The position numbers were made by a program, and so were the translations under genes. A DNA stretch of 64,000 nucleotides, taken from the NCBI GenBank assembly GCA_002269645.1, contig NIVC01003052.1, positions 89,560-153,559 of the forward strand. Direction: 5' to 3'. The notes under the pieces are model-generated. The model had not been told where the DNA came from and searched no databases. It worked only from the letters and a program-made list of their open reading frames with translations. How positions within the stretch are numbered: position 1 is the stretch's first letter; each line of letters starts with the position of its first letter. This DNA is from Macrostomum lignano. Its lineage: Eukaryota. This document shows, in pieces, positions 27,580-59,417 of this stretch.

Positions 27580-28010
27580 ATAGTAATCTTGCCCACTTAA
27601 GGTTAGTGTCTCTTCTAATTTCTCTCCCATCTCTTTCCTCTCATCTCTTTTCTCTTCTTTTCTCTCTTTTCCCTTCTTTCTTCTTTCCTTTCTTCTTTTC
27701 TCTTCTCACCTCTAATTTCTTCTTTTCTCTCACCTCCTCTTTTCTATCATCTTTTTATTCCTCTCATCTCTTTTTTCCTCCATGTCTTTTCTCCTGCCAT
27801 CTATTTCTTTTCTTCTTTTTTTCTTCTTCTCTCCTTTCTTTTTTCTTGCCATCTATTTCTTTTCTTCTCTCCTCTTGTATTATCTCTTCTGACTTCTCTC
27901 TTTTATTTTCTATTTTATATATCTTCTCTCATCTCACTTTTCATCATCTTTCTTTTTTGTCATATCTCATTTTCTATTGAAATTACCCTTCCCATCTCTT
28001 TTTCACTCTC
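27580..28010. repeat. CT-rich low-complexity tract
   Basis: Almost purely pyrimidine on the plus strand. Confidence 0.85.
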
Positions 28011-29421
28011 ATCTGGCCTACAGCAATGATCAAGTTTTTTATCTGGCTCAAGTTTTTTGACCCCTGCTCTAGACTATAGACTGGCACAAAAAGGGAGTTT
28101 TTAGCTTGATTTAGATCTTGGCTGCAAAAAGGCATGGATAGGCCTAACAGAGTGACCAAATTTTAACAACATTTTATCATGTTATAATTTTGCAAACTTA
28201 ATATTCATTTAAGCCTATGTGCCCAATATAGGTATTAGATACTAATCATTTTGGCAACAAATTTTTAGATAAATGTGTTTTTTGGCTGCAATAATTGCCT
28301 TAAATCAGCTTGATATTGGGGACAAAATGTTTACTATAGGGACATTTTGGCAAGAAGCCTATTTTTACAATATAAATTATTATAAGTATATAATTTTTGA
28401 CAAAAAAATTTGATTTTTTTCAAAGGTAAAATAATTTAGAAACCGAGCCATAAAGGCTGAATCCAAAAATGATATAGAAGTAACATATTATAATTTTTAA
28501 TACACTATATCTCTATGGTTCTTTAGTTTTTTAAAGAAGCAAACATACCCAGAAAGAAATGTGCAAAGTTTTATATACAAGAAAATTATAACAAGAAAAT
28601 TTTTAAGAAAATTATAAAATTATAAAAAAAAAATATTTTTTTATTTTGAAGATGTTGGTAGATAGACAGATTGTGTCAATAAGTAGACAGAAGGCATCAG
28701 TAAGTAGACAAGATTCATGGGTAAGTAGATAGATATCAGTAAGTAGACAAGAAGTATCAGTGAAAGGATAGGAAGTGCCAATGAGTGGACATTGATTGGA
28801 TAGATATCAGTGGACTACTGATATTTCCGTAGACACATTGTAGTTGACAATATTAAAAGTTGATTTTGATTTAGATATATATAAAATTGTTTATGCATTG
28901 AAAAAAGCTAAATAGCACATCAAAGAGTGTAAAAATAATTAAATGCTATATAGTGTATTTTCAAAGCTTAAATTTTATATGTAGGCCTATAAACAAATGC
29001 AACAGGATAAAAATTTGTTGAAATAAAAGGCTTCTTTTTGACTATATAGAGCTTGCATAAATGCATGCAAAATAGGTATTCATGTATGATTCTATTCTTA
29101 ATTTGATTGGCTTAAAAATATTAGGAAAGTAAAAAATGATAAATGTGAATTTGTATAGAGTATAGTTCATACGTTAATGCTTTGAATAGAAAATGTGCTG
29201 CAACAATATTTTCACTGTGGAATGAATGTCACATGCATGGGCTAGCCAAGTGCAATGTGTTTTAGTTGATTTTGAAAATTTTGACTGATGTCACCTGGCA
29301 TTGTGGTTTTCAGTTTAGCATCCTGCATTCGAACACAGATATGCCCAAATTTGCTTAATCAACTAATCTAAGCAATTTAATGCAAGAATATCAATACAGA
29401 TTGTGTGTTTAAATCTGATTC

Positions 29422-30069
29422 ATGACCAAGCTACTACTATTAGTAGATTGTCAGACAGCCTTTCTGGCTAATTGGCCAGCCACTGAGGCTGCGCCAATTC
29501 TCGCCGCCTACGAACGGGCAAGTCAGCTGGTTGGCAGCCCGGGCCTGCCTCCCGATCGTGTACTTTTAGTGTACACCCTGTTCGACCTGCGGCATCACGG
29601 CGCCGGGCCCAGCCGGCCATCTGATCTTTATCCAGGCTTGGCTAGGCTACTCGAAACCAGGCAGCTGACAGCTCTGCCTAAATCTGGCACCAATCTATGC
29701 GCTTCGGTTGTTGTCATGCAGTATCTGTGGCGGCTGATTCGCGAATATCGCCTAGATACAATTTACATTGGCGGCGGACCATTGACGTCTAGTATTAGGC
29801 ATTCGGTTTGTAGATTACGAGAACGATTGCCCGCTAATATTCGCTTGGCTCTAGTTAGGTCTTTGTGCGCGTCTCGATTGTCCAATGGTAGGCCAATGTG
29901 CTCAGCCTGTCTGGGCCTGTACATGGAGTCTGGCGAGCCGAGGCACTGTCCCAGCTGCGGATTGGACTCTCGGTGTCAGTCAGCCGATCAGCAGGCTATG
30001 GAAGCTGTGCAGGCTGCTGGGGTGCACGTTGTTGAGTCACTGTCCGCTTGGGAACTGCTTGTTGACTGA
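29422..30069 (+). CDS. Isochorismatase/cysteine-hydrolase-fold protein with an inserted CxxC-CxxC motif, 215 aa, intronless
   Basis: LLLVDCQTAF (catalytic Asp motif), PKS (Lys), LDTIYIGG.PLTSSI (aligns to IDTLVLAG.ATDVCV), LALVRSLCAS and terminal AMEAVQAAGVHVV. GC-rich ORF in AT-rich flanks. Confidence 0.75.
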   Translation: MTKLLLLVDCQTAFLANWPATEAAPILAAYERASQLVGSPGLPPDRVLLVYTLFDLRHHGAGPSRPSDLYPGLARLLETRQLTALPKSGTNLCASVVVMQYLWRLIREYRLDTIYIGGGPLTSSIRHSVCRLRERLPANIRLALVRSLCASRLSNGRPMCSACLGLYMESGEPRHCPSCGLDSRCQSADQQAMEAVQAAGVHVVESLSAWELLVD

Positions 30070-30971
30070 ATTGATTGATTGTTCTATTCTCCCGACGCTA
30101 TGCACCTTCTGGGTGTTTGTATTTTTGTATGATAAAATATCTTTTCTAACGCTAATCTATCCATCTCTCCCTCTCCCTCTCTCATCTCCCCTCCTCCCCC
30201 CTCTCCCTCTCCCCCTCTCCGTCCCCCCTCTTGTCTCCCCTCTTCCTCTCCCCTATTCCTCTCCCCCTATTCCTCTCCCCCTATTCCTCTCCCCCTCTTC
30301 CTCTCCCCCTCTCCCTCTTCAGTCTCCCCCCTCTCTCTGTACCATCTCCATCTCTCTTCCTACCCCCTTCTCCTTTTCTCACCCTTTCTTCCACTCCTCT
30401 CTTTCGCCCTCTTTTTTGAATTCATCCTCTCTACATGAGGTTTAAAGTTATTGTTTTACTTTGGCTCATCTGTTTTGTACATTCGTATTTAAGTACTTGT
30501 TTGTATTTTTTTGCATCTTTAACAATACCGTAATAATATCCTAGTATGAGCAGGCTTCGAATCCCATTTTTAATTAATTATTACAATTTGAATATCAGTG
30601 TTGATTTATTGCTTAATAATATGTTTTTACTTCCGTTCGTTAATTCTAACGGTTTGAGTTGGCAAGTGTCTGGTGGGCTTCTTTAATTTTTACAAAGCTT
30701 GTATTATTGTTTATTATAATTGCATTTTTACAGTTTTACTTTTTAGCTTACCCGTGTCATTTATTCTTTTTTAACTGAATGTTCTGCTTCAGCCTTGAAG
30801 TATTTTGAATTTTACATACCTCCGAGCATGACCTATTCAATTAACGTTTTTATGCGGACCAAGTTTTAATCATTATGATTTGCCTACGTAATGAATTGCA
30901 AATAAAACTGTATAAGTTATACATATTTTCATTAATAACGCAGGAAAACTTTTTTCTTTTATATTTTTACA

Positions 30972-31275
30972 GTTTGTTTGCAGATTGTCACAGTTTGATT
31001 GCAGATTGTCACATATTGATTGCAGATTGTCACTGTTTGATTGCAGATTGTCACAATTTGATTGCAGATTGTCACAGTTTGATTGGAGATTGTCGCACTT
31101 TGATTGCAGATTGTCGCAGTTTGATTGCAGATTGTCACAGTTTGATTGCAGATTGTCACACTTTGATTGCAGATTGTCACATCTTGATTGCAGATTGTCG
31201 CAGTTTGATTGCAGATTGTCACAGTTTGATTGCAGATTGTCACAGTTTGACTGCAGATTGTCACGCTTTGACTGC
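30972..31275. repeat. 21-bp minisatellite upstream of the CHPF-like gene
   Basis: Unit ttgattgcagattgtcacagt. Confidence 0.95.
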
Positions 31276-31319
31276 AGTCAGTCATTCTATTTTCAGCTCT
31301 GCCGCTAAAAAGCACGATA

Positions 31320-34150
31320 ATGCGAGTTGGCAGATTGAAAATCACCGAATTATTGAAATTTCTGGTCGCCTGCGGAATCGGCTACACTCTGAGGGTTTTA
31401 ATTGAATCTTCAAATTATAAATACTCGAGCTCGCTGGCGGGAGAGCGGCTTAATGCCGTTAATTCGATTAGCGAATCGGAGACTGTCGAGCAGACTCGAA
31501 AGCGGCTCTGTGGCGACATTCACGAGCAGCTGAAGATGCCCTACAGACCGGGTCACGAGAATGAGACCATTGAGTATCGCTTCTTCACGCTGGTCAGTTT
31601 AGCTGCTGTTGCACTCATGGCTGATCCTTGCACCAGACCGCCTGCCTGCCAGATCCTCAGTTGCTGGGTCAGCCTCCCATAGTTTCAGTTGCTGGGCCAG
31701 CCTCCCAGATCCTCAGCTGCTGGGCCAGTCTCCCATAGTGTCAGTTGCTGGGCCAGCCTCCCATAGTTTCAGTTGCTAGGCCAGCCTCCCAGATCCTCAG
31801 TTGCTGTGCCTGCCTCCCAGATCCTCAGTTGCCGGGCCAGCCTCCTAGATCCCCAGTTGATGGGCCAGCTTCCTAGATCCCCAGTTGCTGGGCCAGCTTC
31901 CTAGATCCCCAGTTGCTGGGCCAGCTTCCTAGATCCCCAGTTGCTGGGCCAGCTTCCCAGATCCCCAGTTGCTATAGATCCTCAATAAGCGCAGTCGCAA
32001 TCGCCGAAACCCCACAGGACACTCTGTACGATGTGCACCGCTCGGTGCCCAGAACCTCGCTGAAAAAGTACCAGTCAAATGACATCAGGCAGCTGCTGCA
32101 CGAAGCCTTCCCTCTGCTCAATGCCGAGGGCGGCCACCGCTTCGACATTGACGGTCTACGCGGCGGCTACGAACGTATTGACCCGCTGCGCGGTAAAGAG
32201 TACATTATGTACTTGAATTTATCTAGGCGTAAGCGAACTGGCAAATCATCAGAGATTGCTCAGTTAAGATTGGTCAGGCCGTTCTCTAGCCTGTACGTTA
32301 CCTCTAGGACTCATTATGGTGCTCGGCCAACCGCTCACGAAGCTGTGCATCTGATTCTACCCGCTCCGTTTGAGTTAGTTAGCCACTTACTGGCCTGGTT
32401 AGGAGACTTTTCTAAGCGAGTTTTTCCTAGCGCTAGAAATGTACAGGTGAGTACAGGCTTTTTAATAGTACAAACTTGCCATTACATATTCGTTTTAGAT
32501 TCTGCTCCATTCTTAAAAAGACTTTAGCTATGAAATCCACCCCTTCCTACAATTTGGAATCCGCCCCTTCCTACAATTTGGAATCCGCCCCTTCCTACAA
32601 TTTGGAATCCGCCCCTTCCTACAATGGAATCCGCCCCTTCCTACAATGGAATCTGCCCCTTCATACAATGGAATCTGCCCCTTCATACAATGGAATCCGC
32701 CCCTTCATACAATGGAATCCGCCCCTTCCTACAATTTGGAATCCGCCCCTTCCTACAATTTGGAATCCGCCCCTTCCTACAATTTGGAATCCGCCCCTTC
32801 CTACAATGGAATCCGCCCCTTCCTACAATGGAATCTGCCCCTTCATACAATGGAATCTGCCCCTTCATACAATGGAATCTGCCCCTTCATACAATGGAAT
32901 CCGCCCCTTCATACAATGGAATCCGCCCCTTCCTACAATGGAATCCGCCCCTTCCTACAATTTGGAATCCGCTCCTTCCTACAATGGAATCCGCCCCCTC
33001 ATACAATGGAATCCACCCCTTCATACAATGGAATCCGCCCCTTCCTACAATGGAATCCGCCCCTTCATACAATGGAATCCGCCCCTTCATACAATGGAAT
33101 CCGCCCCTTCCTACAATGGAATCCGCCCCTTCCTACAATTTGGAATCCGCTCCTTCCTACAATGGAATCCGCCCCCTCATACAATGGAATCCACCCCTTC
33201 CTACAATTTGGAATCCGCCCCTTCCTACAATGGATCCGCCCTTTCCTATAACGAAAATGCGCTGACGTCACTCTCATATTCAACTATGCCAACATTTCGA
33301 CCCCCGCCAGGTAAGCCTAGTGGTATTCAACCCGGGCAACAATTCGCCCGAACAGCTGAAGCCACTACGGGATGGCCTCAGCCGTCTGGAACATGCTCGG
33401 CCGGGCCTGCACCTGACTCAGAATCTGATTCTGACCCAGCGTCGATTCTCCTCGGCATTTGGCAAACGCTTGGCTATGAAGCGCCTGCCAATGAAAGCTG
33501 AGCTAGTATTGGCCGACTTGTTCTTTCAGTTCCGGCCAGACTTCTTTGACAGATGCCGATCGGCTCTGATGCAGCAGCAGCTGGCTGAGCAGCAAAGAGA
33601 CGACAACGATGAGCAAGCGCCAGGGCCAAGCGACTCAGTGCTCAGCGTGGTACCATTCTCGCTCTATAGTAAAGAATTCTCAGCGTCATCATCAACAACC
33701 GCTGCTATTGACTCGCTATCAATCGATAAATCCACCGGCTATTGGGATCACGAGTCGCGCGATATCTATTGTATTAGACGTCGGACATTTGATAAAGTTG
33801 GCGGATTTACTAGCAGCAGTAGTACTAGTAGCAAATTATCTGCAGACTCTGAGGCTGGCCAGCTGCTATCTACTGAGGCTAATAGGCGCCTATTCGCTAA
33901 TATTGTACGACGCGGCTCGGCTACTATTGAATTGGTTCGTTCAGCCGATCCGGGCGTGTATTTAAATCATCACGTTTTACCTGGCGGCTGTCCCAGGTAT
34001 GCTCTGTTTGGCTATATGACTCTGGCCGAGTGTCGGGCTAGACTAGATCGAAGTCTGGCGTCTAGAGTGTCTCTGGCCGAGCGGATGCTGGGATCCGCTG
34101 ATGACGCTGCCGCTGCTGCCGCCGGAGCTACAGGAACCACTGTCGGTTGA
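31320..34150 (+). CDS. CHPF: Chondroitin polymerizing factor / chondroitin synthase family protein (CHPF-like), about 513 aa
   Basis: Exons 31320-31592, 32018-32446 and 33311-34150, all phase 0 (1542 nt). N-terminal signal anchor FLVACGIGYTLRVL. Motifs GYERIDPLRGKEYIMYL, LRLVRPFS, FQFRPDFFDRCR, TGYWD, LVRSADPG and C..R.D.SLASR match the C-terminal CHPF/CHSY region as recalled. Confidence 0.8.
31650..31975. repeat. 21-bp minisatellite in CHPF-like intron 1, same family as 8388-9430
   Basis: Unit cagatcctcagttgctgggccagc. Confidence 0.9.
32530..33235. repeat. 21-23-bp minisatellite in CHPF-like intron 2
   Basis: Unit tggaatccgccccttcctacaa(tt). Confidence 0.95.
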
Positions 34151-34379
34151 GTTGTTTTTTTTTATTTGAGCTAGTAATAGCAGTATTGATTGATTGAGTT
34201 GTTTGTTTGATTCTTTCAAGTTTGTATGTGCATACAGTAGGAATATTGTATTGTTTAATGCTTTCCGGTTGCTTGGTTATGGCTTTGAAATCTGTTTGTT
34301 TTGCTTTTGGTCAGCTAAATGGTCTGCTTTGCATTGGTTGCTTTCTATAAGTATTCGCATTTGTTGCTAAGACCTTTTC

Positions 34380-34690
34380 TCAGATTGGTTGCTATGGGAT
34401 AATGCATACGTTGGTTGTCAGGGCTAAGTATTCAGATTGGTTGCTATGGAAAATACTCAGATTAGTTGTTAAGGCAAATACTCAGATTGGTTGCTAGGGG
34501 CAGATGCTCAGATTGGTTGCTAGGGCAAATACTCAGATTGGTTGCTATGGCAAATAATCAGATTGGTTGCTAGGGCAAATACTCAGATTGGTTGCTATGG
34601 CAAATAATCAGATTGGTTGCTAGGGCAAATACTCAGATTGGTTGCTAGAGCTAATCGTTGGATTAGTTGCCAAGGCCTGAAAGATTGGTT
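34380..34690. repeat. About 25-bp minisatellite containing ATTGG
   Basis: Unit cagattggttgctagggcaaatact. Confidence 0.85.
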
Positions 34691-34986: not shown

Positions 34987-37980
34987 GTAACTTATGTATT
35001 TGTAAATTAACATTTTAAACTCCCATCTGTTCTATAGATATTTCTAAGAATTGGTTTTACTTTCGCTATTTTGTTACTACAGTACAGGTTATGGTAATTA
35101 GACAACTGAATGTGCTCAGCAACTCGCTCATCGGTTTTAATTGATACTTTTTGTATATTGCATAGTGTCCTCTTATTTGTAACACGTGGTGAATTGGATT
35201 GCAGATTAACACGAAATATATATGCTTTCTGAAATTGTTTCATTCATCTTCTAAAATCTTTTTTTTATTGAGGCCCGCAAATAAAATTGTTTTCTTATTC
35301 ATTTTTTCAACTCTAGCAGTTACTTATTGTCTGACTGCAACCGCCCTCAGTCCCTGCAGCCACCCTCAATCCCCTGCAGCCTCCCTCAATCCCCTGCAGC
35401 CTCCCTCAATCCACTGCAGCCACCCTCAATCCCCTGCAGCCTCCCTCAATCCCCTGCAGCCTCCCTCAATCCACTGCAGCCACCCTCAATCCCCTGCAGC
35501 CTCCCTCAATCCCCTGCAACCACCCCTGCAGCCACCCTCAATCCCCTGCAACCACCCCTGCAGCCACCCTCAATCCCCTGCAGCCACCCTCAATCCCCTG
35601 CAGCCACCCTCAATCCCCTGCAGCCACCCTCAATCCCCTGCAGCCACCCTCAATCCCCTGCAGCCACCCTCAATCCCCTGCAGCCACCCTCAATCCCCTG
35701 CAGCCACCCTCAATCCCCTGCAGCCACCCTCAATCCCCTGCAGCCACCCTCAATCCCCTGCAGCCACCCTCAATCCCCTGCAGCCACCCTCAATCCCCTG
35801 CAGCCACCCTCAATCCCCTGCAGCCACCCTCAATCCCCTGCAGCCACCCTCAATCCCCTGCAGCCACCCTCAATCCCCTGCAGCCACCCTCAATCCCCTG
35901 CAGCCACCCTCAATCCCCTGCAACCACCCCTGCAGCCACCCTCAATCCCCTGCAGCCTCCCTCAATCCCCTGCAGCCACCCTCAATTTCCTGCAGCCACC
36001 CTCAATCCCCTGCAACCACCCCTGCAACCACCCTCAATCCCCTGCAGCCACCCTCAATCCCCTGCAGCCGCCCTCAATTTCCTGCAGCCGCCCTCAATCC
36101 CCTGCAGCCACCCTCAATCCCCTGCAGCCACCCTCAATCCCCTGCAGCCACCCTCAATCTCCTGCAGCCACCCTCAATCCCCTGCAACCACCCCTGCAGC
36201 CACCCTCAATCCCCTGCAGCCTCCCTCAATCCCCTGCAGCCACCCTCAATTTCCTGCAGCCACCCTCAATCCCCTGCAACCACCCCTGCAACCACCCTCA
36301 ATCCCCTGCAGCCACCCTCAATCCCCTGCAGCCGCCCTCAATTTCCTGCAGCCGCCCTCAATCCCCTGCAGCCGCCCTCAATTTCCTGCAGCCGCCCTCA
36401 ATCCCCTGCAGCCGCCCTCAATTTCCTGCAGCCACCCTCAATCCCCTGCAGCCACCCTCAATCCCCTGCAGCCGCCCTCAATTTCCTGCAGCCGCCCTCA
36501 ATATCCTGCAGCCGCCCTCAATTCCCTGCAACCACCCCCTGCAGCCACCCTCAATCCCCTGCAACCGCCCTCAAAATCTCCGCAACCGCCCGCCCGCAGC
36601 CGGCATGGGCATTACCGGCCTGCTACCCGGTACCTTATAGTAACTTATGTATTTGTAAATTAACATTTTAAACTCCCATCTGTTCTATAGATATTTCTAA
36701 GAATTGGTTTTACTTTCGCTATTTTGTTACTACAGTACAGGTTATGGTAATTAGACAACTGAATGTGCTCAGCAACTCGCTCATCGGTTTTAATTGATAC
36801 TTTTTGTATATTGCATAGTGTCCTCTTATTTGTAACACGTGGTGAATTGGATTGCAGATTAACACGAAATATATATGCTTTCTGAAATTGTTTCATTCAT
36901 CTTCTAAAATCTTTTTTTTATTGAGGCCCGCCGTTAAAATTGTTTTCTTATTCATTTTTTCAACTCTAGCAGTTACTTATTGTCTGACTGCAACCGCCCT
37001 CAGTCCCTGCAGCCACCCTCAATCCCCTGCAGCCTCCCTCAATCCCCTGCAGCCTCCCTCAATCCACTGCAGCCACCCTCAATCCCCTGCAGCCTCCCTC
37101 AATCCCCTGCAGCCTCCCTCAATCCACTGCAGCCACCCTCAATCCCCTGCAGCCTCCCTCAATCCCCTGCAACCACCCCTGCAGCCACCCTCAATCCCCT
37201 GCAACCACCCCTGCAGCCACCCTCAATCCCCTGCAGCCACCCTCAATCCCCTGCAGCCACCCTCAATCCCCTGCAACCACCCCTGCAGCCACCCTCAATC
37301 CCCTGCAGCCTCCCTCAATCCCCTGCAGCCACCCTCAATTTCCTGCAGCCACCCTCAATCCCCTGCAACCACCCCTGCAACCACCCTCAATCCCCTGCAG
37401 CCACCCTCAATCCCCTGCAGCCGCCCTCAATTTCCTGCAGCCGCCCTCAATCCCCTGCAGCCACCCTCAATCCCCTGCAGCCACCCTCAATCCCCTGCAG
37501 CCACCCTCAATCTCCTGCAGCCACCCTCAATCCCTGCAACCACCCCTGCAGCCACCCTCAATCCCCTGCAGCCTCCCTCAATCCCCTGCAGCCACCCTCA
37601 ATTTCCTGCAGCCACCCTCAATCCCCTGCAACCACCCCTGCAACCACCCTCAATCCCCTGCAGCCACCCTCAATCCCCTGCAGCCGCCCTCAATTTCCTG
37701 CAGCCGCCCTCAATCCCCTGCAGCCGCCCTCAATTTCCTGCAGCCGCCCTCAATCCCCTGCAGCCGCCCTCAATTTCCTGCAGCCACCCTCAATCCCCTG
37801 CAGCCACCCTCAATCCCCTGCAGCCGCCCTCAATTTCCTGCAGCCGCCCTCAATATCCTGCAGCCGCCCTCAATTCCCTGCAACCACCCCCTGCAGCCAC
37901 CCTCAATCCCCTGCAACCGCCCTCAAAATCTCCGCAACCGCCCGCCCGCAGCCGGCATGGGCATTACCGGCCTGCTACCC
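34987..37980 (+). repeat. Tandem segmental duplication of the EXO1 upstream region, each copy carrying a 20-bp minisatellite
   Basis: 34987-36628 and 36640-37980 share about 350 bp of unique sequence, the cagccaccctcaatcccctg array and the first EXO1 codons. Confidence 0.92.
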
Positions 37981-40900
37981 TATTTAAAAGCATCTGGCCG
38001 ACCAATTTCAATACGCGAATTGGCCGGTCAAACGGTGGCGGTTGACACCTATTGCTGGCTGCACAAAGGCGCGTACGCCTGCGCAGAGAAGCTGGGATCC
38101 GGCCAGGACACTGATCAATATGTGCACTACTGCATGCGCTATCTCAGGCTGCTGCTAGCTAACCGATTGAAAGTTGTGCTGGTGTTTGACGGGCGAAATC
38201 TGCCAGCTAAGGCCGACGTTGAGCATAAGAGACGAGAGTGAGTATTCGAATTAATAGTTTAGCCTGCTGCTAGTAGCTAGTCTTTTAACTGATTTTTCTG
38301 ATTATCTCATGAGGAAAAACTCAAGCTTGAAATCTGAAACCTGAAATCCCAAAACTGAAATCCCAAGCCTGAAATCCCAAACCTGAACTCTCAAGCCTGA
38401 AATCCCAAACCTGAAATTCCAAGCACGAAATTCCAAACCTGAAGTCCCAAACCTGAAATCCCAAGCCTGAAATCTGAAACCTCAAATCTCAAGCCTGAAA
38501 TCCCAAACCTGAAATCCCAAGCACGAAATTCCAAACCTGAAGTCCCAAACCTGAAATCCCAAGCACGAAATTCCAAACCTGAAGTCCCAAACCTGAAATC
38601 CCAAGCCTGAAATCCCAAACCTGAAATCCCAAGCCTGAAATCCCAAGCACGAAATTCCAAACCTGAAATCTCAAACCTCAAATCCCAAACCTGAAATCCC
38701 AAACCTCAAATCTCAAGCCTGAAATCCCAAACGTGAAGTCCCAAACGTGAAGTCCCAAACCTAAACCCAAAACCTAAAATCTCAAACCTGAAATCTCAAA
38801 CCTCAAGTCTCACGCCTGAAGTCTCAGCCTCAACATTTCTGAGCAAAACTCTGATGCTTCAACTCTCAAACCCGAAGTCCCAAGTCAGGTAAAGTGGCCC
38901 CCTGAAATTGATCGCCCACCCCCAGGACCCGCGCAGCCTACAAGCGCAAGGCTCTGCAGTTGCTGGCCGAAGGTCGCTCAGCCGAGGCGCGCGAAGCTTT
39001 CGAACGCTGCATCGACGTGACGCCAAGCATGGCTCTGGCGCTGATGCGGTCCGCCAGGAAGGAGGGCGCCGACACCATTGTGGCGCCGTACGAGGCTGAC
39101 GCTCAGCTCACGCACCTCTGCAACGCCGGGTTGGTTGACGCGGTCATCAGCGAGGACAGCGACCTGCTAGCGTTCGGGTGCAAGCGGGTGCGCTGTGTTC
39201 ATTTGCTATGTGAATTGCTGTGCTTCTGTTCTGTGATGTGGCGCCGCCATTTCCTCATCCTGGTCCTTTGATGTGGCGCCGCCATTTCCTCATCCTGGTC
39301 CTTTGACGTGGCGCCGCCATTTCCTCATCCTGGTCCTTTGATGTGGCGCCGCCATTTCCTCATCCTGGTCCTTTGATGTGGCGCCGCCATTTCCTCATCC
39401 TGGTCCTTTGATGTGGCGCCGCCATTTCCTCATCCTGGTCCTTTGATGTGGCGCCGCCATTTCCTCATCCTGGTCCTTTGATGTGGCGCCGCCATTTCCT
39501 CATCCTGGTCCTTTGATGTGGCGCCGCCATCCCCTCATCCTGGTCATTTGATGTGGCGCCGCCATTTTCTCATCCTGGTCCTTTGATGTGGCGCCGCCAC
39601 TACCTCATCCTGGTCCTTTGATGTGGCGCCGCCACTACCTCATCCTGGTCCTTTGATGTGGCGCCGCCATCCCCTCATTCCGGTCCTTTGATGTGGCGCC
39701 GCAGCGATGATTTATGTTTACATCATGAAAACTGTGAATTTTCAATCTTATCGGAAGCACAAGTTGACTCTTTACAAACTTAACTTTTGCACTACTATCC
39801 ATAAGTAAGATATTAGAGTTTTATGCTATTATTTATTCTGCACGCTCAAACAGGTGATATTCAAACTGGACAGTCAGGGCAACGGCCTGCTAATGGATCG
39901 CCGTCAAATTGCTCGCCAGTTGTGCATACCCGCTTCAGCTGACGATCCTAATTCAGCCGAGGCTACCGGCTCAACTGGCATGACCTGGGCCAAGTTCCGC
40001 TGGATGTGCATCCTGTCCGGCTGCGACTATTTCTCCGGCGTGCCCGGCGTTGGCCTGGCCACCGCGGCCGGCATTGTTAAACGGACCTGTTTAGATCTGC
40101 GCGGATTGGCTAATAAACTGTTTCTCTATGCTAAGAAAGTGCAACGCTTGAGTAAAGAACAGGTGGAAGCTGTTGTTAGAGCCGATCTTACCTTTCAGTA
40201 TCAGGTGAGGTTGAATCATTTTTTCTAACTTCTTTCGTTAACACATCAGTCTTTCTATTTTGTCTCTGATCCCACTATTTTATCCCTATTTTTTCCTCTC
40301 TGATCCCCTTATTTATCCCTATTTTCCCTCTCTGATCCCCTTATTTTATCCCTATTTTCCCGTCTATTTCCCCCTTATTTTATCCCTATTTTACCTCTCT
40401 GATCCCCTTTATTTTATCCCTATTTTTCCCGTCTATTCTCCCCCTTATTTTATCCCTATTTTACCTCTCTGATCCCCTTATTTTATCCCTATTTTTCCCG
40501 TCTATTTTCCCCCTTATTTTATCCCTATTTTACCTCTCTGATCCCCTTATTTTATCCCTATTTTCCCCTCTATTCTCCCCTTATTTTATCCCTATTTTCC
40601 CTCTATTCTCCCATTATTTTATCCCTTTTCCCCTTTTCTGATCCATTTCTGTTATCCCCTGTTTCCCCTTTCTGATCCCCTTCCTTCATCCCTTGTTGCG
40701 GCTGTCTAATTCCCTTATACCAATGTCCCCTACCTTACTGCTTCCAGGTGGTATTCGATCCTATCCAACGTCGCCAATGCCGATTGAACACTCCACCATC
40801 GGCTGCAGAATCCGAGGCGGAAGCGCCATCAAATTTGGACTTTGCCGGCAGCATTCTGTCAGACAACGCTTTGGCCCTGCAGCTGGCTCACGGCAATGTC

Positions 40901-54740: not shown

Positions 54741-57700
54741 GTCTATCTATCTATCTATCTATTTTTCTATCTGTAACAAAGTCTGTGTGGCTTGCAGAGA
54801 GAAAAAACTTCTTAGAGCTGGCCAAGCCTAGCTCTCTCAATAAATACCAGTTTATTTTCCAGCCTGACTAGGCTGACCAATCAGCCGCTACCTCTGGTGT
54901 GCTCGCGCTCCAGAGTATGCACATGCGCGAGTACAATCCGAGAGAGAGAGAGAGAGAGAGAGACAGCCCCCCCCATCTCCCACTCTGCACAGAAAGCGAA
55001 ACGCAGTCACCACATCCCTCCACACGTAGATGAAAAAAGAAAAAAAACAGCAACAAAAAATAAACAAAAAAAGAGAAAAGAAAATACTTCCCAGCACCAC
55101 GACAACAATAACAGAAACAAAAAAAATCGAAGACCACCGAAAGCTGTAAACAAAAAAAAAGGTCTGTCAGGGAAAAAACAAAAAAAAACGTTCACTTGTA
55201 CGTCAACCTGTCCGGGCATTTTCGGTTCCTCTGCGAACGCCGTGCCTGAGGAGTCGGAGGAAGCGGCGGCTGCGTGGGCGGCGGCGGCGCGGTCGGTGGC
55301 TGTGTGGGCGGCGGCGGCGTGGGCGGCAGCAGCGGCGGAACTTCTGCCTCAGCCGATTCGTAGCGCAGCTCGTCATTAATTGGCAGTTCCGTGCTTCCTG
55401 AGGTCAGCGGTTCGACGCCTGCAGAGGCTACATGGTCGGCGTGGCGGCGTACAATGCGATCATCAGGCAGCCGGCACTCGTAGGACAAAGGTGCTGTTTG
55501 TCGGCTGATGCTGGCCGGCAGCCACTTCTGCTGACCCGTGAAATCCCGCACTACGACGTCGTCGCCTTCCTCGAAGGACCTCGCTCTGGCGCGCCTGTCG
55601 TGTTGTAGCTTCTGTGCCTCCTGTCGTCGCGTGACCGCAGCCGAGACGTCCGGACGTACCAGATCCAGCAGTGTTCGCAGAGGCCGGCCCATCATCAGCT
55701 GGCTCGGCGGAACGCCAGTCGTGCTGTGCGGAGTCACCCGGTAGGTCAGCAGGAACCGAGCGAGCCGAGTCTGCAGAGCCGCCGGCTGTCCCTTTGCCAG
55801 AGCCGCCTTCACCGTTTGTACCGCGCGTTCCGCCAGGCCGTTGGACGCCGGATGATAGGGCGACACCTTGACATGCCGGATGCCATTGCTGCTCATGAAG
55901 CTCTCCATCTCTTGACTCACGAAGTTGGGCCCGTTGTCCGTCACCACGACCTCCGGCAGGCCCAGCTGGCTGAAAGTCCGCCGGAGCCGATCGATTGTAG
56001 CGGAGCTGGTCGCGGACTGGCAGATGTGCACCTCGATCCACTTGGAATGCGCGTCGACCAGAATCAGCAGCATCTTGCCTTCGAACGGTCCAGCGTAATC
56101 CATGTGGACCCTTGACCACGGTCTGTCAGGCCAGGGCCAGGGCTGCAGCGGCGCTGGAGGTGGGCTGTGCTGATGCAGTTTGCACTGCCGGCAGTGCTGC
56201 GAGAGCCGCTCGATGTCTCCGTCCATTCCCGGCCACCAAAAATAGTTCCTGGCCAGCGACTTCAGCTTGGACGCTCCTAGGTGACTTTGGTGCAGACACT
56301 CGAGCAACGCCAGGCGTCCCTGAACCGGCACCACCACTCTGGTGCCCCACAGCAGGCAGCCGTCCTCCACGCTAAGTTCCGCAGCTCGAGACGCAAACGG
56401 CCGCAGATCTTCGCTCCCTCGCCGATCCTCCGGCCAGCCTTCTTGCACGAACCTGAGCACTCGACCGAGTAGCGGGTCTCGCCGTGTCCAGCAGCGAACT
56501 TGAGCCGCAGTCACTGGGCCCTCGTTGAATGAGTCGATCAGCAGTACCACCTCAGCCGGCGCCGGCGCCTCCGCTGGCTTGGACGGCAGCGGCAACCGGC
56601 TCAGTGCATCCGCCCGCAGCAGGGTGGCGCCCTTGCGGTAATGCAGTCGATAGGAGTAGCTGGACAGCAGCAGAGCCCAGCGCTGAATCCTGGCAGATGC
56701 TAGTGGCGGAATGGCCTTGTTCTCGTGAAGCAGTCCTAGAAGCGGCTTGTGGTCACTCTTCAGCTGGAAGTTCCGGCCGTACAGATAGGTGTGGAATCGC
56801 TTGACGCCGAAAACAACTGCCAAGGCCTCCTTCTCCGTCTGGGAGTAGTTCTTCTCCGCATCGGCCAGAGTGCGGGACGCAAACGCGATGGGCCGCTCCA
56901 CGCCATCTATCAGGTGGCAGATGACCGCGCCGAGACCGTAGGGCGAGCTGTCGCACTCCAGGATGACCTCTTTACCGGGGTCGAAATGCACTAGCGTCTG
57001 AGAGCTCAGCAGGAGCTCCTTGCAGCGGTGAAACGCACTCTCTTGCGGGCTGTTCCATTGCCAGGCAGCGCCCTTGTCCAATAGGCGGTGCAGCGGAGCG
57101 AGCCAGCTGGACAGGTTCGGCAGGAATCGTCCATAATAATTTATGAGGCCCAGGAAGCTGCGGAGTTGGGTGACGTCCTGGGGAGCTGGCGCCTCAACGA
57201 TCGCGCTGACCTTGCTTTCCAGCGGGTGGAGACCGCCGGCGTCGATTCGGTGGCCCAGGTAACTCACGGACTCCTGCATGAACCGGCACTTGTCAGCTCG
57301 GCACTTCAGCCCAGCATCTTGTAGGCGCTGCAAAACGGCTTCCAGGTTCTCCAGGTGCTTCGCGTCATCAGTTCCTGTCACCAGCAGATCGTCGATAAAA
57401 GTCGCCGTGTGCGGTCTTCCTTGAAGCAAGCCGTCCATTGTCCTCTGAAACATGCCGACTGCCGGTGAGATGCCGAACGGCAACCTGGTGTACCTGAGCA
57501 ACCCTTTGGAGGTGTTGATGGTGCACAGACGCTGTGATTCCGAGTCCAGTGGCAGTTGCTGATACGCCTGACTGAGGTCTAGCTTGGTGAATTTCTGGCC
57601 TCCTGTTAGCTTTGCGAACAATTCTTCAATTCTGGGCAGCGGGTAGGAGTCCTGCACAACGTCTTGGTTCACCGTGCGCTTGAAATCCGCGCAGATTCTG

Positions 57701-59417
57701 ACGGATCCATCCGCCTTGAGCACCGGCACGATAGGAGACGCGTACTCGGAGTTAGAGACAGGCTGCAGAACGCCTTGCTCGATCTCCCGGTCCAGCTGCT
57801 CCTCCACCTTGGACTTCAAAGCGAACGGCACCGTCCGAGCTTTGAAAAATTTGGGCTGTGCACCTGGTTTCGTCCGCAATTTCAGTGGTTCGCCTGTGTA
57901 GCAACCGAGTCCGTCCGAAAATACTGCGCTGTACTTTTGCAGCAGCTGCTCCACCTGCTGATTTCCCTGAGCCGGCAGTTCTCGCTCTCGCAGCTCCTTG
58001 ATGCTTCTCCAGTCCATGGTTAGTTCAGACAGCCAGTTCCGTCCGATCAAGCTGGAGCCGCTTCCTGAGACCACCACCAGAGGCAGCAGTTTCTTTTCAT
58101 TTCCTGGAATCTCCACAGTGACGCTCAACTGTCCCAGCACGTTGACAGGTTGGCCGCCGTAGTTCCGCAGCCGAATCGTGGTCCCACCGAGCTTAGGGAT
58201 ACCTCCGAGAAGATCCTGGTAGACTTTGGCTGAGATCAACGACACCGCGGCGCCCGTGTCTATCTCCATCTGGCAGGACACGCCGTTGATCAGTACCTTG
58301 GTCAAGTAGGGTGGCACCTTGGCTGCAACGCTGGGCACGGTGTTAAGGGAGCTGCAGTCCTCGTCTTCTGCTTCTTGCACGGCGCCCACGCGGGGCTTGG
58401 AGTCCGCACCCGATACTCCGGCGCCTCTACGGCAAGCAGCTGCGGTGTGCCCGAGCTTGCCGCACTTGAAGCATGCCTTCTTGATGAACGGGCACTTGTC
58501 CGCCAGATGTCGAGTCGACAAGCACCGGAAACACTTCTGTGGGGCTCGACCAGATCCGGTCGCCTTGGCCTGGTCGACTCGATCGACTGAAGCAGCCGCC
58601 GCAGGGCCAGCCACCTCCTGTGAGCTCCTGACGACCGTGCAGCCTTTTTCCGCCAGCTCCACCGCTTGAGCGATCTTCAGCGCCTTCTCGAGATCCAGCT
58701 CCGGCTCCGACAGCAGTCTGCGCTGGATCCGATCGTCCTGGATGCCGAGCACCAGCCGATCCCTGAGCATCGACTCCAAGCTGTTTCCGAACTTGCAGTC
58801 CACGGCCAGACGCCGCAAACTGGCCAGGAAATCCGCCACTGACTCGGTGCTGGCCCGCACGCGCTGATAGAAATGAAAACGCTGCACAATTTCAGAAGGC
58901 TCCGGCTTCCAGTGCTCCTTTAGTTTTTGGCAAATGTCTGCGTAGCTCGTCTCCGATGGCTTCCTCGGGGCCAGCAGGCTGCAAATCAGCTTGAATGTCT
59001 CCTTGCCACAGACACTGAGGAAGACAGCTCGCTTTTTGTCTTCGGACTCTATGTCGCTTGCAATGAAAACTTGCTCCATTCTTTCCTTGTACTGCAGCCA
59101 GTCCTCATTTTCAGGCTCAAATGGACCGATGCTACACAGTAGGCCCGTGGCCATTAGTCACCTCGTCGCCACTGTAACAAAGTCTGTGTGGCTTGCAGAG
59201 AGAAAAAACTTCTTAGAGCTGGCCAAGCCTAGCTCTCTCAATAAATACCAGTTTATTTTCCAGCCTGACTAGGCTGACCAATCAGCCGCTACCTCTGGTG
59301 TGCTCGCGCTCCAGAGTATGCACATGCGCGAGTACAATCCGAGAGAGAGAGAGAGAGAGAGACAGCCCCCCCATCTCCCACTCTGCACAGAAAGCGAAAC
59401 GCAGTCACCACACTATC

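What the first reader, a model, noticed from the sequence alone, without database searches (positions are those of the whole stretch)
29422..30069. Isochorismatase-fold protein with a putative zinc ribbon inserted and Ser replacing the catalytic Cys
Seen: the ORF aligns by eye along the whole cysteine-hydrolase fold. D9 (VDCQ) and K87 are kept, but the nucleophile position reads LTSSI (S124) instead of TDxCV. Between the LCAS strand and the last helix, normally a short loop, is an insert of about 35 aa with C160-x2-C163-x12-C176-x2-C179 (29899-29958). Known: this family (nicotinamidase, YcaC, ISOC1/2) uses an Asp-Lys-Cys triad, and I know of no member with such an insert. Inference: a novel architecture, either a pseudo-enzyme or ligand sensor or a Ser-nucleophile variant. 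It is intronless in an intron-rich genome, so retrocopy or horizontal origin is possible.
Basis: partly seen in the sequence, partly recalled or inferred. Interest (0 to 1): 0.72.

Follow-up and report, generated by a model that had tools for sequence, protein, structure and literature searches.

The report
Flatworm cysteine-hydrolase relative, catalytically disabled
This Macrostomum lignano gene encodes a very divergent member of an unstudied animal branch of the isochorismatase-like cysteine hydrolases that carries a four-cysteine metal-binding loop, and the flatworm copy alone has lost both the catalytic cysteine and a backbone group needed for catalysis, so it is probably a conserved but non-catalytic descendant of an enzyme.

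Summary
Window 29422-30069 (+) is an intact 215-aa ORF of Macrostomum lignano with D9, K87, S124 and C160-x2-C163-x12-C176-x2-C179. Alone it matches no Pfam family. An exhaustive search and a profile search place it in a clade of at least 107 PF00857 proteins from animals, protists and bacteria. An alignment-based AlphaFold model (pLDDT 92.5) matches only nicotinamidase, CSHase, YcaC and TrtA-type folds.

The four-Cys loop is not unique. It is present in all 36 animal-type members (molluscs, cnidarians, amphioxus). Protists and bacteria have a shorter loop there, so it looks like an elaboration in place, not an inserted domain.

What is unique is the catalytic centre. Cys124 is Ser only in the flatworm (Cys in 105/105 others). 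Thr120, whose backbone N-H forms the oxyanion hole in TrtA and BiuH, is Pro. In all, 20 of 39 family-conserved columns are changed (others: median 1, maximum 5).

The gene is still constrained: two homeologous copies differ at 1/648 nt against about 2.9% in the flanks. The deposited gene model is transcript-derived.

The CDS is also intronless in scallop, Nematostella, coral and amphioxus, so a flatworm-specific retrocopy or transfer is not supported.

Best reading: a retained pseudo-enzyme. Interest is moderate.

The parts
29422..30069 (+). Single-exon CDS, 215 aa plus stop: divergent isochorismatase-like (cysteine hydrolase fold) protein of Macrostomum lignano. It corresponds to deposited model BOX15_Mlig017384g1 on the homeologous contig.
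29446..29448 (+). D9, catalytic Asp position (VDCQ aligned with the ID-Q motif). Retained.
   Evidence: aligned with the IDMQ Asp of TrtA
29575..29577 (+). T52, where 77/83 relatives have Cys (TRCPF motif, end of strand 2). Extending the alignment by one residue puts this column at the substrate-binding Glu of TrtA (inference).
29584..29625 (+). Residues 55-68 (DLRHHGAGPSRPSD): the loop holding the lineage-specific extra residues after strand 2. Lowest model confidence in the protein (pLDDT 71-77).
29680..29682 (+). K87, catalytic Lys position. Lys in 104 of 107 sequences of the wide alignment and invariant in the 84-sequence alignment A2. Retained.
29776..29781 (+). G119-P120, at the position of the family-signature cis-peptide (Cys-Thr in relatives, Val157-Thr158 in TrtA). 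The backbone N-H of residue 120 is an oxyanion-hole donor in TrtA, BiuH and NicF. Pro has no N-H.
29791..29793 (+). S124 (AGT) at the nucleophile position. Cys in 105/105 other family members.
29797..29799 (+). R126, invariant Arg directly after the nucleophile motif. Retained.
29866..29877 (+). C149-A-S-R152 (LCGAR motif of the clade). C149 and R152 are invariant in A1 and A2 and retained here.
29899..29958 (+). Four-Cys module C160-x2-C163-x12-C176-x2-C179, a presumed structural metal (Zn) site. All four Cys are present in every animal-type member.
29980..29991 (+). S187-A-D-Q, the degenerate form of the clade's SPVD motif that opens the last helix.

Best explanation
The ORF is the Macrostomum lignano ortholog of an uncharacterised clade of isochorismatase-like cysteine hydrolases (motifs ID-Q ... 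K ... GGCTTTSCVRVS ... LCGAR ... SPVD). The clade occurs in bacteria, protists and marine invertebrates. In the animal-type branch, the loop between the fifth strand and the last helix grew and gained four invariant cysteines. These most likely hold a structural zinc ion that braces the loop and the C-terminal helix (inferred). In the flatworm lineage the protein evolved about twice as fast as its relatives and the catalytic centre was taken apart. The nucleophile Cys became Ser. The Thr whose backbone N-H forms half of the oxyanion hole became Pro. The neighbouring conserved Cys119, Cys52 and Asp145 were lost too. The fold, the Asp-Lys pair, both invariant arginines and the four-Cys site were kept. 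The protein therefore most likely no longer performs the ancestral thiol-dependent amide hydrolysis. It probably persists as a folded, metal-stabilised, non-catalytic protein (a pseudo-enzyme, possibly a ligand-binding or partner-binding protein). Shown: family membership, fold, the residue states and their uniqueness, sequence constraint between two genomic copies, and the intronless state across animals. Inferred: zinc binding, loss of activity, and any binding role.
For: Family and fold:
- Exhaustive phmmer found 9 remote relatives of the same length. Four of them reach the PF00857 gathering score.
- The profile search found 107 members across phyla.
- The family profile hits solved cysteine hydrolases with the D, K and C motifs in register.
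- The AF2 model has pLDDT 92.5 and pTM 0.89. The top 50 Foldseek PDB hits listed are all of this superfamily at probability 1.00.

Catalytic lesions:
- Position 124 is Cys in 105/105 others. Position 120 is Thr in 102/105 and never Pro. The block 114-130 is gap-free.
- In TrtA the cis-peptide V157-T158 is the family signature. The oxyanion hole is the backbone N of T158 and C162. C162S has no detectable activity yet binds substrate (PMC7948467).
- BiuH C175S is inactive with substrate bound, and its oxyanion hole uses T171 and C175 (PMC5806882).
- The window protein changes 20 of 39 columns that are >=90% conserved. The others have a median of 1 and a maximum of 5.

Still maintained:
- The frame is intact (chance of no stop about 1.8e-4).
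- The two homeologous loci differ at 1/648 nt in the ORF against 72/2462 in the flanks (Fisher p = 1.2e-6). That matches the neighbouring CHGN exon (2/800).
- The Mlig_3_7 gene models are built from RNA-seq and transcript assemblies (PMC5730564).

Four-Cys site:
- All four Cys are present in all 36 animal-type members, despite a variable spacer of 11-18 residues.
- The loop is modelled at pLDDT 86-94.
Against: - No biochemical data exist for any member of this clade, so the ancestral substrate is unknown and loss of activity is inferred by analogy with TrtA and BiuH.
- Asp9, Lys87, Arg126 and Arg152 are all kept, which could mean a working, altered active site.
- Gly-Pro at 119-120 may well preserve the cis-peptide geometry, so the pocket shape may survive.
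- The low divergence between the two copies could partly reflect gene conversion or a locally low mutation rate. The single difference is non-synonymous (G165A), and no dN/dS could be computed because no closer ortholog was found.
- The AF2 confidence comes largely from relatives in the alignment. The single-sequence model failed (pLDDT 36.5).
- Transcription is inferred from how the annotation was made, not from reads I examined.
Confidence: 0.6

Rival explanations
1. It is an active enzyme with changed chemistry. Either Ser124 acts as nucleophile, activated by Lys87/Asp9, or the Asp/Lys pair acts without a covalent nucleophile, as in true isochorismatases such as EntB and PhzD, which lack the Cys (the last point is from my own knowledge).
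For: D9, K87, R126 and R152 are all retained while much else changed. The ORF is under constraint. The changes concentrate in the loops that follow the strands, which looks like remodelling rather than random decay (inference).
Against: Cys-to-Ser abolishes activity in TrtA and BiuH. The T120P change also removes an oxyanion-hole N-H, so an acyl-enzyme route loses two elements at once. No other of 105 clade members uses Ser.
Confidence: 0.2
2. It is a transcribed but functionless relic: a gene drifting under relaxed selection that has not yet acquired a stop or frameshift.
For: Extreme divergence: 20/39 conserved columns lost and the longest branch in the family (mean distance 1.85 against 0.93). 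Catalytic residues are lost. No close ortholog is found in any other species in 15 billion proteins.
Against: A 215-codon frame with full-length, indel-poor homology would not survive that much neutral change (P of no stop about 1.8e-4). The four ribbon Cys, C149, both Arg, the Asp and the Lys are all kept. The two copies differ at 0.15% against about 2.9% in the flanks (p = 1.2e-6).
Confidence: 0.15
3. The gene entered the M. lignano genome recently, as a retrocopy or by horizontal transfer, or it is a contaminant. That would explain the lack of introns and the sharp GC step.
For: Single exon. ORF GC is 55% against 28% upstream. Bacterial and protist homologs exist.
Against: The orthologous CDS is also single-exon in Mizuhopecten, Nematostella, Branchiostoma and Oculina. 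The protein has the animal-type four-Cys loop, not the protist or bacterial loop. It sits next to CHGN and XPG genes on a 745-kb contig and in a second syntenic locus. GC of 50-60% is usual for other coding stretches of the window. An ancient transfer into early animals is not excluded, but that is a different claim.
Confidence: 0.03

Closest known systems
Isochorismatase-like (cysteine) hydrolases with solved structures: triuret hydrolase TrtA (6XIX/6XJ4), biuret hydrolase BiuH, maleamate amidohydrolase NicF (3OT4/3UAO), N-carbamoylsarcosine amidase, YcaC, nicotinamidase PncA
   Same: Same three-layer alpha/beta fold (Foldseek probability 1.00, TM 0.5-0.6). The Asp and Lys of the triad are in register, and so is the G-x-T-x-x-x-C-V motif block.
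   Different: Ser replaces the nucleophile Cys, and Pro replaces the Cys-4 Thr. It has an additional four-Cys loop before the last helix, which I found mentioned in none of the papers searched. It was not compared residue by residue with these structures. Sequence identity is only 11-20%, and the sequence itself fails the PF00857 model.
Engineered TrtA C162S and BiuH C175S substrate-trap variants
   Same: The same Cys-to-Ser replacement in the same triad. These variants fold, bind substrate and are inactive. That is the best available model for what S124 does.
   Different: Those are single laboratory substitutions in otherwise intact active sites. The flatworm protein is a natural variant with many further changes around the pocket.
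Uncharacterised animal proteins LOC106869601 (Octopus bimaculoides), LOC124122583 (Haliotis rufescens), LOC110443402 (Mizuhopecten yessoensis), LOC117331355 (Pecten maximus), LOC116603661 (Nematostella vectensis), Hypp2042 (Branchiostoma lanceolatum)
   Same: True homologs over the full length (25-31% identity). They share the four-Cys loop, the LCGAR-type motif and, where checked, a single-exon CDS.
   Different: All keep Cys124, Thr120 (Val in Octopus), Cys119 and Asp145 (the SPVD motif is kept by the named members), so they look like active enzymes. The flatworm protein is the only one that has lost them.

Membership tests
Isochorismatase-like / cysteine hydrolase superfamily (Pfam PF00857) | The sequence matches the PF00857 profile at or above the gathering score | tested here: not met
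   The window protein has no PF00857 hit at E<=10. Its relatives P0003, P0005, P0008 and P0010 score 27.8-34.5 bits against a cut-off of 27. Most of the 107 profile hits carry PF00857.
Isochorismatase-like / cysteine hydrolase superfamily (Pfam PF00857) | Three-layer alpha/beta/alpha fold with a parallel sheet, shared with nicotinamidase, CSHase and YcaC | tested here: met
   AF2 model pLDDT 92.5. All top-50 listed Foldseek PDB hits belong to this superfamily at probability 1.00. The best viral hit is a nicotinamidase.
Isochorismatase-like / cysteine hydrolase superfamily (Pfam PF00857) | Catalytic Asp at the end of strand 1 | tested here: met
   D9, aligned with the ID-Q motif and the IDMQ Asp of TrtA.
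Isochorismatase-like / cysteine hydrolase superfamily (Pfam PF00857) | Catalytic Lys | tested here: met
   K87 is invariant in alignments A1 and A2 and aligns with the catalytic Lys of TrtA.
Isochorismatase-like / cysteine hydrolase superfamily (Pfam PF00857) | Nucleophilic Cys in the T-x-x-C-V motif | tested here: not met
   S124 (AGT) in both genomic copies. Cys in 105/105 other clade members.
Isochorismatase-like / cysteine hydrolase superfamily (Pfam PF00857) | Oxyanion hole from the backbone N-H of the residue at Cys-4 (Thr) and of the Cys | tested here: not met
   Position 120 is Pro, which has no N-H. It is Thr in 102/105 and Val in 3/105 others.
Isochorismatase-like / cysteine hydrolase superfamily (Pfam PF00857) | Signature cis-peptide bond between the Cys-5 and Cys-4 residues | not testable with these tools
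   Model coordinates are not exposed. Gly119-Pro120 is compatible with a cis bond (inference).
Animal-type four-Cys-loop subfamily of the clade (defined here) | Four Cys (CxxC, 11-18 residues, then CxxC or CxC) between the LCGAR motif and the SPVD motif | tested here: met
   C160, C163, C176 and C179, with spacing 2-12-2, the commonest pattern.
Animal-type four-Cys-loop subfamily of the clade (defined here) | Clade motifs GGCTTTSCVRVS, LCGAR and SPVD | tested here: inconclusive
   They are present in degenerate form: GGGPLTSSIRHS, LCASR, SADQ. G117, G118, S123, R126, S128, C149, R152 and S187 are kept.
Classical zinc ribbon | Two beta-hairpin zinc knuckles, and a match to a zinc-ribbon profile | tested here: not met
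   Only sub-threshold Pfam hits: Zn_Tnp_IS91 E = 0.027, DZR_2 E = 0.31, Zn_ribbon_3 E = 1.9, and at best 0.0044 in a relative. The model shows helix 161-170 right after the first CxxC and coil at the second. Metal binding itself could not be tested.
Nicotinamidase (PncA/Pnc1) | Active-site metal held by Asp/His residues after strand 2, and nicotinamide hydrolysis | not tested
   Nicotinamidases are the top Foldseek hits, but only at 14-18% identity. No nicotinamidase-specific motif was examined. JGI's label 'nicotinamidase-related amidase' on some relatives is generic.

The most novel reading that the evidence does not exclude
Marine invertebrates share an undescribed zinc-braced subfamily of isochorismatase-like hydrolases, and M. 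lignano has turned its copy into a natural 'substrate trap'. In this reading the protein still binds the ancestral small-molecule ligand through Asp9, Lys87, Arg126 and Arg152 but cannot turn it over, so it acts as a sensor, buffer or regulatory partner.
Probability: 0.3. Interest if true: 0.55.

Novelty: new variant of a known kind. Interest (0 to 1): 0.4.

Why it matters
There are two modest points. First, a distinct clade of PF00857 proteins is found in animals, protists and bacteria, and its animal branch has an invariant four-Cys site. It has no characterised member and no literature that I could find, so its substrate and the role of the metal site are open. The canonical members from scallop, Nematostella and amphioxus are easy targets for expression. 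Second, the flatworm protein is a clean natural example of an enzyme becoming a pseudo-enzyme. Two separate catalytic elements are lost (the nucleophile thiol and an oxyanion-hole N-H), while the scaffold and the presumed structural metal site stay under constraint. It does not bear on a long-standing question, and no phenotype or pathway is attached to it yet.

Tried and rejected
- Single-sequence searches were uninformative: Pfam, NCBIfam and PDB phmmer. The word-indexed homolog search returned only the protein itself.
- Single-sequence AlphaFold failed (pLDDT 36.5).
- dN/dS could not be computed. The only close sequence is the homeolog, with one difference, and no other flatworm ortholog is in the collections.
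- The neighbour-joining tree is distorted by the long flatworm branch. I used it only for branch length, not for placement.
- Literature searches found nothing relevant for 'isochorismatase' plus 'zinc ribbon', 'isochorismatase' plus 'pseudoenzyme', or 'Mlig017384'.
- The gene neighbourhood of a bacterial member gave no functional hint (P0078: pectate-lyase-like, DUF945, aldo-keto reductase, SelO).
- No canonical AATAAA lies within 600 nt downstream, only a GATAAA at 30131. This is not informative.
- A look-up of Branchiostoma belcheri P0021 found no record, so I used B. lanceolatum instead.
- Rejected: sequencing error at S124, because both loci carry the same codon. Rejected: contamination, because the gene has animal neighbours in two syntenic loci.

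Full report
**What is in the sequence**

Window 29422-30069 (+) is an ATG-to-TGA frame of 215 codons, with in-frame stops directly upstream of the ATG.
- D9 in VDCQ
- K87
- LTSSI, with S124 encoded by AGT at 29791-29793
- C160-x2-C163-x12-C176-x2-C179 at 29899-29958

The ORF is a GC island: 55% against 28% in the kilobase upstream. That is in line with other coding stretches of the window.

The only close database match is 'hypothetical protein BOX15_Mlig017384g1, partial' of Macrostomum lignano. It lies on a 745-kb contig next to a CHGN glycosyltransferase gene and an XPG nuclease gene.

**Is the fold call right?**

The sequence alone does not show it. There is no PF00857 hit at E<=10, nothing in NCBIfam and nothing in PDB by sequence. 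The single-sequence AlphaFold model is useless (pLDDT 36.5).

The relatives settle it.
- The exhaustive phmmer search over 1.84 billion representatives found nine remote relatives of the same length (E 3e-7 to 1e-3, 26-33% identity). Four of them reach the PF00857 gathering score.
- A profile of these recovered 107 proteins, most of them annotated PF00857.
- The family profile hits solved cysteine hydrolases (TrtA 6XIX, NicF 3OT4, CSHase, YcaC-like 4WGF), with the Asp, Lys and Cys motifs in register.
- With an 84-sequence alignment the AlphaFold model reaches pLDDT 92.5 and pTM 0.89.
- Every one of the top 50 listed Foldseek PDB matches is a nicotinamidase, CSHase, YcaC, TrtA or MAR1-type protein at probability 1.00, with TM 0.5-0.6.

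The fold assignment is therefore sound.

**The four-Cys insert**

In fact it defines a whole branch of the family. All 36 full-length animal-type members carry four Cys here. They include Octopus, Haliotis, Pecten, Mizuhopecten, three Branchiostoma, Nematostella, Oculina and Desmophyllum, plus unnamed transcriptome and metagenome sequences.
- The first pair is always CxxC.
- The second pair is CxxC in bilaterians and Nematostella, and CxC in coral-type sequences.
- The spacer is 11-18 residues.

Between the invariant R152 and S187, these proteins have 30-41 residues, protist members 25-29 and bacterial members 10-14. Protist sequences already show the L-x3-Y-G/M helix, with Ala and Asp where the first Cys pair sits, and often one Cys near the second pair.

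So the site looks like a loop that grew and was then stapled by four Cys, not like a mobile zinc-ribbon domain dropped in.
- The model places a helix (161-170) straight after the first CxxC and coil around the second, at pLDDT 86-94.
- All zinc-ribbon Pfam matches are below threshold.

I call it a four-Cys, presumably zinc-binding module of unresolved type. Metal binding is inferred from the invariance and from the absence of any signal peptide-like N-terminus. It was not tested.

**What is unique to the flatworm protein**

Columns 114-130 are gap-free across the 107 sequences of at least 150 aa in the wide alignment. Against the other 105 sequences:

| Position | Other 105 members | Flatworm |
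|---|---|---|
| 124 | Cys in 105 | Ser |
| 120 | Thr in 102, Val in 3 | Pro |
| 119 | Cys in 104 | Gly |

The published structures explain why this matters.
[quoted passage not shown] C162S has no detectable activity but still binds triuret and biuret (PMC7948467).
- In BiuH, C175S is inactive with substrate bound, and the oxyanion hole uses T171 and C175. NicF uses T146 and C150 (PMC5806882).

The alignment maps family G118-C119-T120...C124 onto TrtA G-V157-T158...C162. The flatworm protein has therefore lost the thiol nucleophile. It has also put a proline, which has no backbone N-H, at the oxyanion-hole donor position. Gly-Pro may well keep the cis geometry; that is inference.

More widely, the protein departs from the consensus at 20 of 39 columns that are at least 90% conserved. 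The other 83 sequences have a median of 1 and a maximum of 5.
- The radical changes are C52T, P88S, V115Y, C119G, T120P, C124S, V127H, D145V, L146R and V189D. They lie in the loops that follow the strands, which is where the active site sits in this fold.
- The remaining changes are conservative: I8V, L114I, V142L and the like.
- D9, Q11, W18, K87, R126, R152, C149, N155, S187 and all four loop Cys are kept.
- There is also a lineage-specific insertion of about seven residues after strand 2, within residues 55-68, modelled at low confidence.

Its branch is the longest in the family. Mean distance to the other four-Cys members is 1.85, against 0.93 among those members.

**Is it still a functioning gene?**

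A second locus (L001) is syntenic with the window. Aligned blocks are 83-96% identical, and 91-96% in the long blocks around the gene, which fits the known duplicated genome.

Between the two loci the ORF differs at 1 of 648 positions (G165A). The alignable flanks differ at 72 of 2462 positions and carry many indels (Fisher p = 1.2e-6). That is as conserved as the CHGN coding stretch at 33200-33999 (2/800).

A random 215-codon frame of this composition would stay open with probability about 1.8e-4.

The deposited model comes from an annotation built from StringTie/TACO assemblies of RNA-seq and a mapped de novo transcriptome, with ORFs called by TransDecoder (PMC5730564). This is indirect evidence of transcription. 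I did not see reads.

**Origin**

The CDS is single-exon not only here but also in these four orthologs:
- Mizuhopecten: 663 nt
- Nematostella: 684 nt
- Branchiostoma lanceolatum: 660 nt
- Oculina: 678 nt

In each of the four it lies beside at least one ordinary animal gene. Intronlessness is thus a trait of the animal branch, not a sign of a recent retrocopy or transfer in M. lignano. An ancient transfer into early animals cannot be judged from these data.

**Most likely mechanism**

The ancestral protein was a thiol amidohydrolase of unknown substrate. The two invariant arginines hint at an anionic substrate; that is inference. The flatworm descendant keeps the scaffold and the presumed structural metal site but lacks two catalytic elements.

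My estimates:
- about 0.7 that the ancestral chemistry is lost
- about 0.6 for the overall reading of a constrained pseudo-enzyme
- 0.2 for altered chemistry (a Ser nucleophile, or Asp/Lys-only as in true isochorismatases)
- 0.15 for a drifting relic
- 0.03 for a recent transfer or retrocopy

**Novelty and score**

The protein is a new variant of a known kind. The subfamily with the four-Cys loop is in the databases as 'uncharacterized protein' entries, but I found no description of it. The natural double lesion is new as far as I can tell. No function, pathway or phenotype is attached, so I score interest at 0.4.

Noticed in passing
window 55192-59154 (-): An intact 1320-aa ORF with aspartyl protease, reverse transcriptase, RNase H and integrase domains. 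It is the pol of a Ty3/gypsy-type LTR retrotransposon and is possibly still active. I did not print its sequence or look for LTRs.
   Followed up: partly
window 35335-37926: A very long tandem array: a 20-nt unit CTGCAGCCACCCTCAATCCC repeated about 132 times. It accounts for the strongly C-rich strand (GC skew -0.57) and yields long spurious ORFs. Window 36200-38500, which covers most of the array, has no aligned counterpart in the homeologous locus.
   Followed up: partly
window 30969-31277, 31640-31973, 32530-33248, 34379-34655: Four further tandem arrays with periods of 21, 28, 22 and 25 nt, between the gene and the CHGN gene or inside it. The 21-nt array gives the repetitive 'LIADCHS' ORFs in three frames.
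   Followed up: no
window 30160-30318: A CT-rich 14-nt-period tract directly downstream of the stop codon, possibly in the 3' UTR. It differs by an indel of about 40 nt between the two homeologous loci.
   Followed up: no
window 28000-28399: A non-coding block about 1 kb upstream of the ORF differs from the homeolog at only 3/400 positions, against 4-9% in the 1.4 kb further upstream. No gene is called there in L001. It could be a promoter, an enhancer or an unannotated 5' exon.
   Followed up: no
window 29584-29625 (residues 55-68): The flatworm-specific loop insertion after strand 2 contains D55 and an H58-H59 pair. From memory, nicotinamidases hold their active-site metal with Asp/His residues in roughly this region. 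Model confidence is low here (pLDDT 71-77). It may be coincidence.
   Followed up: no
relatives P0100, P0061, P0074, P0019: P0100 fuses the PF00857 domain to a NADAR domain (PF08719). P0061 and P0074 carry an EF-hand (PF13202). These may hint at the clade's substrate or regulation. The coral-type P0019 has an internal duplication of the LCGAR-CxxC segment.
   Followed up: no
L006-L008: The four-Cys-type relative P0004 lies on gene-dense eukaryotic metagenome contigs (Tctex-1, TMEM138, Rpr2 and Rho-GDI within a few kb). The four-Cys form may therefore extend to a small-genome eukaryote outside the named animals. The organism was not identified.
   Followed up: no
L001 10001-10627 versus window 29422-29442: The deposited protein is marked 'partial' and starts at V8, yet both loci have an in-frame ATG seven codons upstream. 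The assembled transcript is either 5'-truncated or trans-spliced near there. This is unresolved.
   Followed up: partly
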